Made by a program: the position numbers and the translations under genes | The notes under the pieces: model-generated | What the model was told of the DNA's origin: nothing | Database searches by the model: none | Seen by the model: only the letters and a program-made list of their open reading frames with translations | Shown: piece by piece, positions 37,060-43,314 of the stretch | How the letters are laid out: every line of letters starts with the position of its first letter | How positions within the stretch are numbered: the first letter of the stretch is position 1 | Source: Neoconidiobolus thromboides FSU 785 | Lineage: Eukaryota; Fungi; Entomophthoromycota | NCBI GenBank assembly: GCA_025603075.1 | Contig: MU626367.1 | Location: forward strand, 1-64,000 | Direction: 5' to 3' | DNA length: 64,000 nucleotides

Positions 37060-38034
37060 AATAAATCTTTTAAATCTTTTTATTTTACTTTAAACTTTTT
37101 AAATTGAGACTAATTTTTAAGTAATTTTGAGGCCAATTTGGACATCCCCAAATGTTAGCTAGTCAAAAACAAAAGCCATGTTTTAATTTTAAATGGAGGC
37201 TAAAATGTATTTCAAGCATTAAAAGCTGATTTCTTAAGACTAAAACATGTTCTTTATGGCGAGACCTTACCATCTAAACCTTGGGTACTTGTTATTAATA
37301 GAATCTCTATCGAAACTGTTACTGGTAAAATTATCACTTGATAAATTCATTATCAATTGACTTATATTTATTTTAAAATTATATTCTATTTTAATTATAT
37401 TCTATTTTATGATTCAAAAATAAGACCATAACAATACAAACGATATAACAAATGGTTTTTATGTTATCTGATGTTCTTTTTATAATATACAACATTATAT
37501 TTTATAGCATTAATAGTTTTTAAGTCTTTATTTAAACCTTGTAACCAAATATAGAGTTTTCGTTGTTTCGATAATCTTCTAAGCTATCAAAGCAATGGAA
37601 AAAGCTTCTATATTAAGAATTAAGATAAACTCTGGTTATTGTAAATAAATAATTTAGTTATCTACTCTGAAAACTAACTTTATAAAAAGTTTAAGCTTAT
37701 ATTAATTCAAGTAATTCAAGTTATAAGGATATTTTTTTTAATATTATTTGAAACCGAAAATAACAACTGAAATGAGGTTAAAAAAACAACGAATTGAGCC
37801 AATAAAAAGTAAGTGAAAATCAAATTATTAGTTAAATAAAAATAAAAATCATTTTAAAAAAATAAACGTTAGTAAAAAAGAAGATAATGAAAATAAACAG
37901 AGGCAGTAATAAACTATAAGGAAATATCAACAATGAAATGGAAAAAATGAAAAGTAATAATTTGTTATTATTATTGTTTTTCATTTTCAATTCATCTATT
38001 TATTTATTCATTTGCATAACTTTTAATTAATATC

Positions 38035-41000
38035 ATGAAAGAAGAGCTACTAACTAATAATAATGACATTGACGATTTAAGTGAAGATGAAGATGAAGAT
38101 AATTTACTAATAACTAATATAACATTAAAGCAATATTATAAAAGATTAAAAAAATTGATATTAAAAAGTCAAAGTAAAAAATTTAAAAAAGAGTTAATTC
38201 AAACTTTGAACACCCATGAACTTATCACTCGAGACAGTCAAGAGTTTACCTTATTTATTCAACTGATATTAGAAGTTATCTTTTGTTATTTGGATTTCAT
38301 CACCCTAGATGATCAAGATATTGATATATATAATGATATTTTAATGTTATTGATGAATCACGAACAATTTCATGTTGACTTAAACTGGAGAGGTAGTTGA
38401 ATTATTACAGTACAATCAACTGTTTTTAATATTTATTTTTAACTTAGATGAAAAAGGACAAACTATTCTGTTTAAAGCGACCTGTTTAGATTTAGTAGAC
38501 AATATCAAAGTACTTATTGAACTAGGTGCTGATCCTACAAAACTAGATAATGATGGTAGAACTCCTTTAGCAATAGCTGCTTCTTTAGGCCACGCTGCCT
38601 CTTGCCAATTATTTACGAGTCTGGAAAAATATCCCATCAACCAACCTGATCTTCAAGGAAATACTCCTTTATCTTTGGCAGTAATAGGAAACCATTTAGA
38701 TGCTGTAGTACAACTATTGTTAGATGCTAAAGTAAATGTAAATAAGGCGGATTTGGTAAGTGCTGTTTTGAATTTTATAGTTATGGCTATTTATAATTTT
38801 TTAGTATGGCTGGACTCCTTTGATGTTAGCTTCCCATTTGGGTTATTTGGATTTAATTGAGCCACTCTTGGCTGCTGGAGCAAATCGAGATTTGATAGCA
38901 CTAAACAAGAAAAACGCAATTGAGTTAGCTCTTGAGAATAAACACAATCCAATAGCCAAAAGACTTGTGAGTTTTTCCAAAATCAGTGACAAATATAAGC
39001 ATATACCTAAGCGAGATAAGGACATAACTATAAAAGAGAAAAAGAAGGAGATCAAAAAGGAAGCTAAAAAAGAGAGCTTCATGAAGTTTGAAGATTCTTT
39101 TATGAAAGATTTATCTCTATCCTCTTGTGAGCAATTAGAAATTCAATCTAGATTAAAAAGAAATTCAAGTTTAGGGAAATCTAGAAATGCTTCTCCAAAA
39201 GAAGAAACGATCGATGACAACTCAAGCTTTAGTGAAACTAGGAAATTGGTTAGGAACGGAACTTTAAGAAATAGAAAGATATATAATCAACTTGTTGAAA
39301 ACGAATTACAAATAGAACAAAGTGAAGTGCCATTGAGTAATTTATCAAACAATTTAGAAAATGAAGAAGGTCCAAAAGAAGGAATAAGGGCTTACTTCAA
39401 TTTAAGCCATTTAAATAAATGGGAATATTTCTCTAGATTGCTAACAATCTGTGTTATTCCGCCTTTCTTGAGTAAATTAGGTGGCATGAAAGACCCACAT
39501 ATACAACAAGCTTGGAGAGAGAAAGTAGCATTATGTTTTATTATTTTAATGATTTCGTTTGGTCTTGGATTTTTAACTTTTGGGTTTTCTTCAATTATTT
39601 GCCAAAAAATTATTCCCATATTTCCAGACCAAGTGGCACGTGATTTTGGTATACATGCAAATGGAACCAAATTGATGATTGTAAGAGGACAGCTTTATGA
39701 TGTGGGTTCTTATTTTCCAGTTGGAAATCATCGACCTATTTTACCATTTGTTGATGAAGATTTAAAAGATACTATTGAGCCTTACTATGGACATGATATC
39801 TCCCATATATTTCCACCAGATAAAAAGAGTTCGTCTTGTAAGTTTTGGCCCAAAAATTTCGATGAAAAATGTAAAGGCCTACAAGACGACCCTAAATTAC
39901 ACTGTCATACCTCTGCAGAATCATGGCGTGCGTTAAAAGAACTTTCAATCAAGAACTACGTCGCATTTTCTTGGGCGAATATTACAAACTCAATCAATAA
40001 TGATAAACTATTCGTATTTAATGAGAAAGTATATACTTTAAAAGATTACTTTCTAGTACCTGAAGAAGAGGAAGAAGATCCAGATCTTTATCTCGGTGAG
40101 GAGTTGACGGAAGTTTTAAAGTCCTTTATTGGTAGAGATGCTACAAAAGATATATTAAACAATAATAAACTAGCTGAGTTAATCCCTTGTTTTGAAGATC
40201 AATTGTTGGTGGGCAAGCTGGATGGTACTACTATTGGATGTTTTGCTTCTAATTTAGCTATGGTCATTGCTACCTCAATCTTATTAACAATCACCGTTAT
40301 CAAGTTCCTTGCTGCCATAAGCTTTGATTGGTTCCTTTCCTGGAAGTTAGGAAAAATATCCAATAAACCTCGTAACAAGAATACCCTTCCTCACCTCTTA
40401 TGTCTTGTAACTTGTTATTCAGAAGGTGAATCAAGTTTAAAAACAACCTTAGATTCTATTGCATTGTCCGATTATTATGATAAACACAAAATACTTTTTG
40501 TAATTGCAGATGGTGACATCACTGGTTCAGGTAATGAAAAATCTACACCAGATATCTTATTAGACATGCTCGAACCCTTAGATAAAGATGAAGAAATTAA
40601 ACCAAAAGCGTATATTTCTATTGGAGATGCTAAAAAACAAATGAATATGGCGAAAGTTCATATCGGAAATTATGTAGTACAAAATGACCGAAGAGTCCCT
40701 ATGGTGTTGATAAATAAATGTGGTTTGCCATATGAAAGAAATCAACCTAAGGCTGGAAATAGAGGGAAAAGGGACTCTCAATTGATATTAATGCGTTTCC
40801 TGTCAAACCTATGCTTTAACGAAAGGATGACCCCACTTGAATTTGACTTGTTTGAAAAGCTTTATCGTTTGACTAATATTACAGCTGATAAATATGAAAT
40901 GGTATTAATGGTAGATGCAGATACAATGGTACTACCAGATGCTATTTCTAAGATGGTATCAGCTATGGAGAGAGATCCAACTGTTATGGGGCTTTGCGGT

Positions 41001-42602
41001 GAAACTAAGATTGAAAATAAAAGACAAAGCTGGGTGACGATGATTCAAGTGTATGAGTATTATATATCTCATCACTTAGGAAAAGCATTTGAATCCATCT
41101 TTGGTGGTGTTACTTGTTTACCAGGTTGTTTTTGTATGTATCGTATCAAAGTAAGTAAACCAGATGGTTACTGTGTTCCCATATTAGCTAACCCTGATAT
41201 TGTTAAAAACTACTCTTCCAATGATGTATCAACTTTGCATAAGAAAAACCTTTTGTTATTGGGTGAAGATCGTTACCTAACCACACTAATGCTTAGAGCT
41301 TTCCCAAGGAGAAAAATGATTTATGTTCCTAAAGCTATTTGTAAAACAGTTGTACCTGATGAGTTTAAAGTACTATTATCACAAAGGAGAAGATGGATTA
41401 ATTCTACAGTACACAATTTGTTAGAGTTGGTATTAGTACCACAATTGTGCGGTATTTTTTGTTGTTCTATGCAGTTTGTTATTTTATTAGAGCTTTTGGG
41501 AACAGTTGTAATGCCAGCTTCATTACTATTTTTATCTTACTTGATAGTTAGTGCTTTCATGGGTCAAGATGTATGGCTACCCCTTTTCTTTATGGCCTGT
41601 CTTTATTTTATGCAAGCTATATTAATCGGAGTTACGACACGTAAAGTATCTTACATAGGATGGATGTTTATTTTTATTCTAGCTATGCCTATATGGAATT
41701 TTGTATTACCAGTCTATTCTTTCTGGCATTTTGATGATTTTTCATGGGGCGCAACTAGGAAAATTGATGGCCCAGATAACGGCCACGGTGATTCTAATGG
41801 GGAGAAGGAAGATGAAATAGAATGCATTGAACAAAAAAAGATTGGTGAATGGCAAAAATTATCAAATAAAAAGAAAGAAAAGAGAATGAGTTACCAAGCT
41901 AAGGCAGAACAAAATAAGCTTAGAAGCATACGTATTCAAGAACTAGAATTAGCTAAAAATTTTAAAGATGATAAGCTTAAACAATATCATCAAACTTTAA
42001 ATAAGATTAAATTAGTTCAACTCAAAGAAAATAAAATTGAAATTGCACCTAATCATGAAACTATAGAAACAACAAAAGCGCTTGCTAGTCCTACTTCGCC
42101 AAGCGCTGAGATAACGACTGAGAAGTTGTTCTTTGAGAAACAAATCCATGAAAGACCCAAATCCGTTGCAATGGAACAATTGAACACAACACTAAAAAAC
42201 GTTCCAAAGAAACCAAATAGAAGACTGTCAGTGGATAGAACTGAAGATAATGGGTTTTTATTCTTAAATCAAAACAATATCACAGTTGGAATCCAACCAC
42301 CGTTTAATAATAAACCTACAATAGATACTTTTGATGGCCAAGAAGAGGTTCAAGGAACAATATTAAAGGATAATCGTTCCCCTGAGCAGCCTCCTTTAGA
42401 GCTAGGGTTATCAAGGTTAAATCTTAAGATTGAATCAAATATTTATGATCGCCCAAAAACATTACCTAGGGGACCTAGACTAGATAATAAATTCAAAGAA
42501 ATTCAACATGAAGATGAAGGGTTTGATAATAGTAGCATCTCGAAACCTCTTCAAGTGCATACAGTTAAAGGAAAGCGAGTATCTCGGGACATGGATTTTT
42601 AA
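38035..42602 (+). CDS. Chitin synthase (division 2, class IV/Chs3-like) with N-terminal ankyrin repeats
   Basis: Introns 38393-38447 and 38756-38804 join three exons in frame. Ankyrin repeats: GQTILF, GRTPLAIAA, GNTPLSLAV, GWTPLMLAS. Also cytochrome-b5-like segments, LMVDADT, TCLPGCF, EDRYLT and QRRRW. Confidence 0.9.
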
Positions 42603-42708
42603 ATTGATAGTAAATAAATATTTTTTTATATTAAATGTATTATTTTTATAACGAATAATTGATAAATAATTTTAAAAAATAAAGACAAAAATAAAATTAT
42701 TAACGTTT

Positions 42709-43314
42709 TCATTGCTGTAAAAATGGATTGCTAATTTCAATAGCTTCCTCTTCAGGATGAATCAATACTACAGTAGGGCCACGACATACTAGTAAACCTA
42801 ACTCTCTAGTTTTATCTGAACCTTTGGCTTTATGAAAATATAAGTTTTAAATTGTATATAATTGAAATAATCTTACTATTGCTTTCATTTGAATCCGCTA
42901 TTAACAAGTTAAAGATTAATATTTTATATTAAGATTTAAAATGATTTTGCTTTACCTCTTATAATTTCTATAGTATGGTCTAAAACCAAGTTTAAAAGGG
43001 GGTCGAACCCTTTTAAAATACCAGAAACTAAAAATTAGGTCATTGAATTTGAAAAGTGAAGGAAAAAGTAATTTACCTTCTCTGCCACCTGAAAATTTAA
43101 CATGTACTTTTTTTTCTAAAAATTTAGAAAGATCCAATATCGACTCTTTCTTCTTCTTAGGTTTATCTAAATTATCCTTATTTCTATCGCCGTTATTGTT
43201 TGAATTTCCTCCTCTTCCTCGAGTGCTATTTCCTCCTCTTCCTGTACCACGTCCCTATACATTTAATCAGTTTTATTCTTTATTATTTTATTTCATCATT
43301 ACTCTTCCTGACAT
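42709..43314 (-). CDS. LSM7: U6 snRNA-associated Sm-like protein Lsm7 (multi-exon)
   Basis: Spliced reading KKESILDLSKFLEKKVHVKFSGGRE|VSGILKGFDPLLNLVLD...TRELGLLVCRGPTVVLIHP...ISNPF; RGG-rich N-terminus. Confidence 0.92.

What the first reader, a model, noticed from the sequence alone, without database searches (positions are those of the whole stretch)
38035..38990. Chitin synthase with an N-terminal ankyrin-repeat module
Seen: two canonical short introns splice an acidic helical exon and about 5 ankyrin repeats in frame onto a class IV-like synthase. The last repeats (GWTPLMLASHLGYLDLIEPLLAAGA) lie in the same exon as the catalytic domain, so the fusion does not depend on my splice model. 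Knowledge: the familiar N-terminal accessories of fungal division 2 synthases are cytochrome-b5-like and myosin-motor domains; ankyrin repeats are not part of the standard class definitions. Inference: an alternative protein-interaction route for localising or regulating the enzyme.
Basis: partly seen in the sequence, partly recalled or inferred. Interest (0 to 1): 0.7.

Follow-up and report, generated by a model that had tools for sequence, protein, structure and literature searches.

The report
Ankyrin-repeat chitin synthase, conserved clade member
This is a real, transcribed fungal chitin synthase gene with an ankyrin-repeat domain at its front end, but the same fusion is found in many early-diverging fungi, so it is one member of an old and little-described enzyme group.

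Summary
A three-exon gene (ATG 38035, stop 42602) encodes ankyrin repeats followed by a division-2 chitin synthase: Chitin_synth_2 at 759 bits, with VDAD, QVYEY, EDRYL and QRRRW intact. Two of the repeats lie in the same exon as the enzyme.

An RNA contig identical to the window starts 128 nt upstream of the ATG. It removes intron 1 exactly as modelled and runs past the stop codon. Intron 2 is retained in every RNA contig seen. It is supported only by canonical splice sites and by exact collinearity with two intronless relatives.

The fusion is not a peculiarity of this gene. At least 38 of the 120 best database clusters carry Ank + Chitin_synth_2. They come from Entomophthora, Basidiobolus, Coemansia, Syncephalis, many Glomeromycotina, Endogone, Calcarisporiella and Blastocladiella. 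In a tree of the catalytic core they all fall on one side of a 99%-supported split.

The family module is a seven-repeat solenoid with a GWT[AP]LM signature found in every aligned ortholog. The classification papers I read never mention it; one supplementary table lists a single Rozella protein.

The ankyrin module's role in targeting or regulation is inferred, not shown. The scan had already noted this same stretch in another read of this genome (s1-247488).

The parts
37907..38034 (+). 5' leader of the transcript, containing short upstream ORFs (ATGs at 37933, 37938, 37947)
   Evidence: The X1 RNA contig starts at 37907 with adapter letters before it. The uATGs were listed.
38035..38392 (+). 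Exon 1 coding part: an acidic N-terminus followed by four predicted helices, sitting where repeats R0-R1 of the family module lie. Homology not demonstrable.
   Evidence: ORF. No BLAST hit to orthologs. hhalign probability 0.3%. AF2 single-sequence pLDDT 52 with helices at 28-43, 48-60, 69-88 and 93-107.
38393..38447 (+). Intron 1 (55 nt, GT..AG), confirmed as spliced
   Evidence: A joint 38390->38446 (cut +2), GT..AG, is seen in X1 (depth 107.7) and X3.
38448..38755 (+). Exon 2: ankyrin repeats R2 (to 38548), R3 (38549-38650) and R4 (38651-38755)
   Evidence: Pfam Ank/Ank_2 at E about 1e-14. Collinear with orthologs.
38756..38804 (+). Intron 2 (49 nt, GTAAGT..TAG). Predicted from homology and frame, but retained in all RNA contigs seen.
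   Evidence: Exon 2 residue 102 and exon 3 residue 1 fall on adjacent residues of orthologs. The orthologs P0001 and P0002 are intronless ORFs. No joint is listed here in any run.
38805..38990 (+). Start of exon 3: ankyrin repeats R5 (with the GWTPLM signature) and R6 (C-terminal cap)
   Evidence: Pfam Ank at aa 1-30. Matches the last repeat plus C-cap of DARPins. W and M are present in 27 of 27 aligned orthologs.
38991..39518 (+). Lys/Glu/Ser-rich linker between the ankyrin module and the first membrane segment. Poorly conserved.
   Evidence: Translation. Only weak, patchy BLAST alignment to orthologs.
39519..39605 (+). First transmembrane-like segment
   Evidence: Kyte-Doolittle 19-residue mean of 2.53.
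39960..40214 (+). CHS4-like domain (PF22997), between the two N-terminal membrane segments
   Evidence: Pfam 5e-12, aa 386-470 of exon 3.
40230..40340 (+). Second transmembrane-like segment
   Evidence: Kyte-Doolittle 2.30.
40371..41858 (+). Chitin_synth_2 catalytic domain. Motifs: VDAD 40911-40922, QVYEY 41046-41060, EDRYL 41265-41279, QRRRW 41382-41396, SWGATR about 41742-41759. Membrane segments cluster at 41409-41729.
   Evidence: Pfam 3.9e-228. Motifs and hydropathy.
41859..42602 (+). C-terminal tail, charged and with no Pfam domain (no DEK_C), ending in the stop codon
42603..42827 (+). 3' untranslated region covered by the transcript contig
   Evidence: The X1 contig ends at 42827.

Best explanation
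The locus is an intact, expressed gene for a division-2 (superclass IV-type) chitin synthase. Its cytosolic N-terminus is an ankyrin-repeat solenoid. It is an ordinary ortholog within an old group of ankyrin-bearing chitin synthases, shared by Zoopagomycota, Glomeromycotina, Endogonales, Calcarisporiella and Blastocladiomycota, with probably a Rozella relative. Its nearest relative is the Entomophthora muscae protein.

Shown here: the domain order, the catalytic motifs, transcription from upstream of the repeats, splicing of intron 1, and conservation of the module.

Inferred: the topology. Two membrane segments lie between the repeats and the GT2 domain, which puts both on the cytosolic side.

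Inferred mechanism: the ankyrin groove, which carries a conserved Trp at a canonical target-contact position in repeat 5, binds a conserved partner. That partner would control trafficking, placement at growth or septation sites, or activation. This would be the role played by short N-terminal sorting motifs in yeast Chs3 and by the myosin motor domain in class V/VII enzymes.
For: - Pfam domains and scores.
- 38 of the top 120 homolog clusters have Ank + Chitin_synth_2; the best hit is 60% identical over 85% of the query.
- The exons are collinear with orthologs, and the repeat register continues across the exon 2/3 junction.
- P0001 and P0002 encode the whole fusion in single ORFs.
- In the catalytic-core tree, all Ank-bearing rows and the window lie on one side of a split with SH-aLRT 99. 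The window is sister to E. muscae at 75% core identity.
- An AF2 model of the Basidiobolus ortholog's module has pLDDT 94.7 and 14 helices, which is 7 repeats.
- In GWT[AP]LM, W and M are present in 27 of 27 aligned orthologs.
- A transcript contig runs 37907-42827 with intron 1 removed.
- Differences in related strains fall mostly at third codon positions of exon 3 (table 3).
- The yeast Chs3 N-terminus carries the exomer and AP-1 sorting signals (PMC3463608 and PMC4207043).
- Division-2 accessory domains are described as cytochrome b5-like, myosin motor and DEK_C only.
Against: - Intron 2 is retained in every RNA contig laid (X1, X2, X6; X3 starts inside it). Retention gives a stop at 38858-38860, so the full-length fusion protein is not demonstrated at the RNA level in this organism.
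- Exon 1 has no detectable similarity to repeats R0-R1 of the family.
- The aromatic groove residues that are conserved in most orthologs are replaced in the window's R3-R5.
- No partner, localisation or activity has been tested anywhere for this group.
- The tree is unrooted and was built with a quick search.
Confidence: 0.8

Rival explanations
1. The ankyrin part and the synthase are made as two separate products. Intron 2 is normally retained, so translation from ATG 38035 ends at the stop at 38858-38860 and gives an ankyrin-only protein of about 256 residues. The synthase would then start at the internal ATG at 38823 with only about 1.5 repeats. A variant of this reading is that retention is a regulated switch between the two outcomes.
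For: No contig in four RNA runs skips 38756-38804, while intron 1 is skipped in X1 and X3. The X1 contig, at depth 107.7, carries intron 1 spliced and intron 2 unspliced.
Against: - Contigs show presence, not absence. Intron 1 is also retained in the X2 and X6 contigs although it is clearly spliced in X1.
- The splice sites are canonical, and a 49-nt intron must be removed to keep the frame.
- Removal joins R4 to R5 in perfect register with the intronless orthologs.
- The read-through peptide is hydrophobic and has no homolog.
Confidence: 0.1
2. The ankyrin module acts on the enzyme itself, through autoinhibition, oligomerisation or quality control at ER exit, and does not recruit a localisation partner.
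For: The yeast Chs3 N-terminal domain is reported to mediate at least dimer formation and ER exit (2025 review). Ankyrin solenoids can bind intramolecular segments (general knowledge). A long linker of about 175 residues (38991-39518) would allow the module to fold back.
Against: Nothing tested here distinguishes this from partner recruitment. The linker is poorly conserved, so there is no obvious conserved intramolecular ligand.
Confidence: 0.2
3. The gene is decaying. The N-terminal repeats are degenerate, an intron is poorly spliced, and the product has no function.
For: - Exon 1 has lost recognisable repeat sequence.
- Intron 2 is retained.
- Earlier scan notes mention catalytically dead synthases elsewhere in this genome (unchecked).
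Against: - The 1265-codon exon 3 is intact.
- All catalytic motifs are present.
- The gene is transcribed in four runs.
- Substitutions between strains fall mainly at third codon positions, and an indel in exon 1 is in frame.
Confidence: 0.03

Closest known systems
Entomophthora muscae protein P0001 (labelled 'ATP-dependent RNA helicase' in NCBI) and the other Ank + Chitin_synth_2 proteins of early-diverging fungi
   Same: The domain order is the same: ankyrin repeats, linker, TM, CHS4 domain, TM, Chitin_synth_2. Identity is 60% overall and 75% in the catalytic core. The GWT[AP]LM signature in repeat 5 is shared. They lie on the same side of the 99% split.
   Different: The window gene has two short introns where P0001 and P0002 have a single ORF. 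Its first two repeats are unrecognisable. It has a long charged C-terminal tail.
Rozella allomycis EPZ33276.1, the only ankyrin-bearing chitin synthase I found mentioned in print (Liu et al. 2017, supplementary tables)
   Same: Ank_2/Ank_4 lie N-terminal to PF03142 in a protein the authors assigned to class IV.
   Different: The Rozella protein also scores for cytochrome b5 (PF00173). The window protein scores only for the CHS4 domain PF22997. I did not retrieve or align that protein itself.
Saccharomyces cerevisiae Chs3 (class IV, division 2)
   Same: It has a division-2 catalytic domain. Its cytosolic N-terminal region decides the trafficking itinerary (PMC3463608, PMC4207043).
   Different: Chs3 uses short linear motifs (19-DEESLL-24 and residues 28-52) and separate partner proteins. 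It has no ankyrin repeats. The DEDNLL of the window's exon 1 resembles that motif, but the match is at chance level (0.43) and is not conserved.
Class V/VII chitin synthases with an N-terminal myosin motor domain
   Same: The logic is the same: a large cytosolic accessory domain fused in front of a division-2 synthase and involved in trafficking and site specificity (Goncalves 2016).
   Different: The accessory domain is a myosin head, not ankyrin repeats. These enzymes also carry a C-terminal DEK_C domain, which is absent here.

Membership tests
Chitin synthase, division 2 (Pfam Chitin_synth_2, GT2) | PF03142 match above the gathering score | tested here: met
   758.8 bits against a cut-off of 27; profile positions 19-526 of 527.
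Chitin synthase, division 2 (Pfam Chitin_synth_2, GT2) | Catalytic motifs QXXEY, (E)DRXL and QRRRW, plus an SWG-type motif | tested here: met
   QVYEY, EDRYL and QRRRW were located. SWGATR was read in the ORF.
Chitin synthase, division 2 (Pfam Chitin_synth_2, GT2) | Catalytic domain flanked by membrane segments, and no division-1 N-terminal domain (PF08407) | tested here: met
   Hydropathy segments lie at aa 239-267, 476-512 and 869-975. PF08407 is not among the Pfam hits.
Superclass IV (class IV-type) of division 2 | No myosin motor domain and no DEK_C domain | tested here: met
   Neither appears in the Pfam scan of the three exons.
Superclass IV (class IV-type) of division 2 | Cytochrome b5-like domain N-terminal to the catalytic domain | tested here: inconclusive
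   PF00173 is not detected. The PF22997 CHS4 domain is present at that place. Some clade members score for both.
Superclass IV (class IV-type) of division 2 | Grouping with named class IVa/b/c references in a rooted tree | not tested
   No named reference or outgroup sequences were available by reference. The tree is unrooted.
Ankyrin repeat (Pfam clan Ank) | Repeat profile matches above the gathering score, with a period of about 33 residues | tested here: met
   Exon 2: Ank 52.1 bits and Ank_2 52.3 bits. Exon 3: Ank 23.2 bits. The spacing between successive G-x-T motifs is 33-34 residues, read.
Ankyrin repeat (Pfam clan Ank) | Folds as a stacked helix-turn-helix solenoid | tested here: inconclusive
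   This was shown with high confidence only for the Basidiobolus ortholog: pLDDT 94.7 and 7 helix pairs. The window's own joined module was not folded, because the joined step was left out. Exon 1 alone gave pLDDT 52.
Ankyrin-bearing chitin synthase group of early-diverging fungi (unnamed) | Catalytic core on the Ank-bearing side of the well-supported split | tested here: met
   The 49-row side contains 37 Ank rows and the window; SH-aLRT is 99.
Ankyrin-bearing chitin synthase group of early-diverging fungi (unnamed) | Seven-repeat module with GWT[AP]LM in repeat 5 | tested here: inconclusive
   The signature is present as GWTPLM, and R2-R6 align. R0-R1 are not recognisable in exon 1.

The most novel reading that the evidence does not exclude
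The ankyrin-bearing synthases are a distinct, ancient and still unnamed class of division-2 chitin synthases. On this reading the class was present before Blastocladiomycota, Zoopagomycota and Mucoromycota diverged and was lost in Dikarya, Mucorales and Mortierellomycotina. Its seven-repeat solenoid, with a Trp in the groove found in every aligned ortholog, docks a conserved targeting or activating partner. In this organism, retention of intron 2 would additionally act as a switch between the full-length enzyme and an ankyrin-only peptide.
Probability: 0.3. Interest if true: 0.55.

Novelty: new member of a known kind. Interest (0 to 1): 0.35.

Why it matters
Chitin synthase classes are defined largely from Dikarya, and their accessory domains explain how each enzyme reaches its site of action. 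This gene shows that many early-diverging fungi carry a division-2 enzyme with a different accessory domain. These include arbuscular mycorrhizal fungi and insect pathogens. The classification papers I read do not mention this domain. Many database entries for these proteins are named 'ATP-dependent RNA helicase', apparently wrongly.

Recognising the group would tidy the classification. It would also point to a testable partner-binding surface. For this particular locus, the result is that the gene is an ordinary member of that group.

Tried and rejected
1. Exon 1 as degenerate repeats R0-R1:
- BLASTP against 120 homologs gave no hit.
- hhalign against a 19-sequence R0-R1 profile gave probability 0.3%.
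- AF2 on the single sequence gave only pLDDT 52, with four helices.
- The idea therefore rests on position alone, and I did not run a fold search on so weak a model.

2. The Pfam TetR_C_19 hit of exon 1 (E 0.0076, 17 bits against a cut-off of 26.8) is taken as chance.

3. The acidic dileucine DEDNLL at exon 1 aa 20-25, as a Chs3-like AP-1/exomer signal:
- A [DE]xxxL[LI] match occurs in 43% of shuffles of the first 60 residues.
- It is absent from ortholog N-termini.
- Rejected as evidence.

4. Literature: six full-text searches and five papers read. None describes an ankyrin-bearing chitin synthase class. In the hits I read, ankyrin and chitin synthase were discussed separately.

5. Solved structures: only division-1 synthases match, and only in the GT2 core (7wjm at 2e-20). 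No division-2 structure was found by sequence.

6. The words look-up of earlier findings returned nothing.

7. Rooting the tree and naming the class: no outgroup or named reference sequences could be obtained by reference. I left out the large representative search as not essential.

All searches, alignments and folds used single exons by reference, or stored orthologs.

Full report
**What is in the sequence**

The region lies in DNA of about 26% GC. An ATG at 38035 opens a 119-codon frame that ends at a GT at 38393. I estimate roughly 0.086 stop codons per random codon at this base composition. The chance of so long an open frame is then about 2e-5, so exon 1 is coding even though it resembles nothing.

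The rest of the model is:
- A 55-nt GT..AG intron (38393-38447), which joins exon 1 in phase 1 to exon 2.
- Exon 2 (38448-38755).
- A 49-nt intron (38756-38804, GTAAGT..TTTTTTAG), which joins exon 2 in phase 0 to exon 3.
- Exon 3 (38805-42602), which holds the rest of the protein.

**Domains**

I searched each exon separately by reference.
- Exon 2 scores for Ank (4.9e-14) and Ank_2 (9e-14).
- Exon 3 begins with another Ank match (aa 1-30, 8e-5). It then has the CHS4 domain PF22997 (aa 386-470) and Chitin_synth_2 (aa 523-1018, 3.9e-228).
- Exon 3 residues 1-64 also match the last internal repeat plus C-cap of designed ankyrin proteins.
- VDAD, QVYEY, EDRYL and QRRRW are all present, and SWGATR can be read in the ORF.
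- Hydropathy gives two membrane segments between the repeats and the GT2 domain (aa 239-267 and 476-512) and a cluster after QRRRW.

If each of the two segments crosses the membrane once, the ankyrin module and the catalytic domain are on the same, cytosolic side. The CHS4 domain would then be on the other side. This agrees with the topology drawn for division 2 in the 2025 review.

**RNA evidence**

Four public runs hold the stretch. All have zero depth over the upstream intergenic DNA (37300-37693; two of them pick up from the 37694-37890 bin). They also carry spliced joints in the neighbouring gene, so they behave as RNA.

Run X1 gives one 4888-nt contig with no differences from the window:
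- It starts at 37907, preceded by adapter letters. That is 128 nt upstream of the ATG.
- It skips intron 1 exactly (GT..AG).
- It continues unbroken to 42827, 225 nt past the stop.

There are no further introns.

Intron 2 is not skipped in that contig, nor in any other contig of the four runs. Retention would end translation at 38858-38860. Contigs show presence, not absence. Intron 1 is likewise retained in the X2 and X6 contigs although it is plainly spliced in X1. So this is an open point and not a refutation.

**Homology evidence for intron 2**

BLASTP of the single exons against the homologs places exon 2 residues 3-101 on ortholog residues 106-203 and exon 3 residue 1 on residue 205. The equivalent pattern holds in a dozen proteins. 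Removing the intron therefore continues the repeat register without a gap.

The two nearest relatives encode the whole ankyrin-synthase protein in a single uninterrupted ORF:
- P0002: 5016 nt for 1671 aa, on a metagenome contig and a Logan contig.
- P0001: 3432 nt for 1143 aa, in the Entomophthora muscae genome.

The fusion as such thus needs no splice model at all.

**How common the architecture is**

The word-based search with exon 3 returned 5926 significant proteins. Among the 120 best clusters, at least 38 have precomputed Ank-family domains together with PF03142. They come from:
- Entomophthora and Basidiobolus;
- Coemansia (many species) and Syncephalis;
- at least twelve genera of Glomeromycotina;
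- Endogone, Calcarisporiella and Blastocladiella.

The best hit is only 60% identical, so this genome's own protein is not in that collection. The organism is probably a relative of Entomophthorales, but I did not identify it.

In a tree of the catalytic core (120 rows, 497 columns, quick LG+G4), a branch with SH-aLRT 99 separates two sides:
- 71 rows with no ankyrin domain.
- 49 rows holding all 37 Ank rows and the window, which is sister to E. muscae at 75% identity.

The eleven non-Ank rows on the Ank side are mostly short or explicitly partial models. Their catalytic core starts 230-490 residues from their N-terminus, against 570-1030 in most Ank rows. They are probably truncated gene models, which I did not verify.

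The tree is unrooted. I therefore cannot say whether the Ank side is a clade or a grade. I also could not place it relative to named classes IVa-c.

**The family's ankyrin module**

Aligning the N-terminal regions of 28 orthologs with the window's exons as separate rows shows a common module. An AlphaFold model of the Basidiobolus ortholog's module, built from a 24-row alignment, has pLDDT 94.7 and 14 helices, which is seven repeats, R0-R6.

The window maps onto this as follows:
- Exon 2 is R2-R4.
- The start of exon 3 is R5-R6.
- Exon 1 sits where R0-R1 are, but its similarity is not significant. Its own fold prediction is weak, with four helices at pLDDT 52.

Repeat 5 carries GWT[AP]LM. The Trp, at a position between G and T that contacts targets in canonical ankyrin proteins, is present in 27 of 27 aligned orthologs. 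So is the Met that replaces the usual His of TPLH. That points to a conserved binding surface. Several aromatic groove residues common in the orthologs are replaced in the window protein.

**What it most likely does**

The enzyme part should make chitin, since all motifs are intact. The ankyrin part is most simply a cytosolic docking module.

The comparison that carries the argument is with the other division-2 enzymes:
- In yeast Chs3, the N-terminal cytosolic segment holds the signals read by exomer and AP-1 (PMC3463608; PMC4207043).
- In class V/VII, a myosin motor domain is fused at the same place and is involved in trafficking and site specificity (Goncalves 2016).

A fused solenoid with a conserved groove fits the same role. 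Autoinhibition or oligomerisation cannot be separated from it with sequence data. Nothing here tests function.

**What the literature says**
- Goncalves et al. 2016 and the 2025 review of fungal chitin synthases contain no occurrence of 'ankyrin'. They list only cytochrome b5-like, myosin motor and DEK_C accessory domains for division 2.
- Liu et al. 2017 analysed 231 fungi. In a supplementary table they record PF12796 and PF13637 as existing in only one CHSIV protein, Rozella allomycis EPZ33276.1.
- Searches combining chitin synthase with ankyrin, PF03142 or Glomeromycota found no paper describing the group.
- The architecture is thus plainly visible in databases but essentially undescribed in the papers I could search.

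**Verdict**

The gene is a new member of an existing, conserved, under-described group and not a unique invention. I score interest at 0.35.

A specialist would find the breadth and age of the group mildly surprising, but this locus adds one more ordinary member. The only unusual local feature is the persistent retention of intron 2 in RNA contigs.

The scan had already flagged this same stretch in another read of the genome (s1-247488).

Noticed in passing
window 38756-38804: Intron 2 is retained in all RNA contigs of four runs, while intron 1 is spliced in X1 and X3. Retention would give an ankyrin-only product of about 256 residues, ending at the stop at 38858-38860.
   Followed up: partly
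window 37933-38030: The transcript leader has three upstream ATGs. One at 37933 opens a 5-codon uORF. Those at 37938 and 37947 open a uORF of 30 or 27 codons that ends just before the main ATG at 38035.
   Followed up: no
homolog list (P0001, P0003, P0028, P0033-P0037 and others): Many Ank + Chitin_synth_2 proteins of Entomophthora, Basidiobolus, Blastocladiella and Coemansia are named 'ATP-dependent RNA helicase' in NCBI, although no helicase domain is among their Pfam hits. This looks like a propagated misannotation, and it may help hide the group.
   Followed up: partly
orthologs P0005-P0012, P0018, P0023 (first 30 residues): Glomeromycotina orthologs share a proline-rich N-terminus ahead of the repeats (…PPYSP…TRTPPP…). 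It contains a PPxY-like motif of the kind bound by WW-domain ubiquitin ligases. The window protein lacks it.
   Followed up: no
window 42692-43200, minus strand: The downstream neighbour, noted earlier by the scan as LSm7, is highly expressed. Its minus-strand introns are confirmed by CT..AC joints (43027->43077 in all four runs; 42827->42956 in three). It lies tail to tail with the synthase, whose transcript contig ends at 42827.
   Followed up: partly
window 38054 and 39542-39842: Runs X2, X3 and X6 come from diverged strains or species. Their differences in exon 3 fall almost only at third codon positions. X3 has an in-frame TAA insertion in the Asn run of exon 1. Both observations fit purifying selection on the reading frame.
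   Followed up: partly
L001 1630-6645 and L002 1054-6069: A metagenomic relative (P0002, 1671 aa, 56% identical) is intronless. It has an extra N-terminal extension of about 230 residues before the repeats, and an insertion in one repeat.
   Followed up: no
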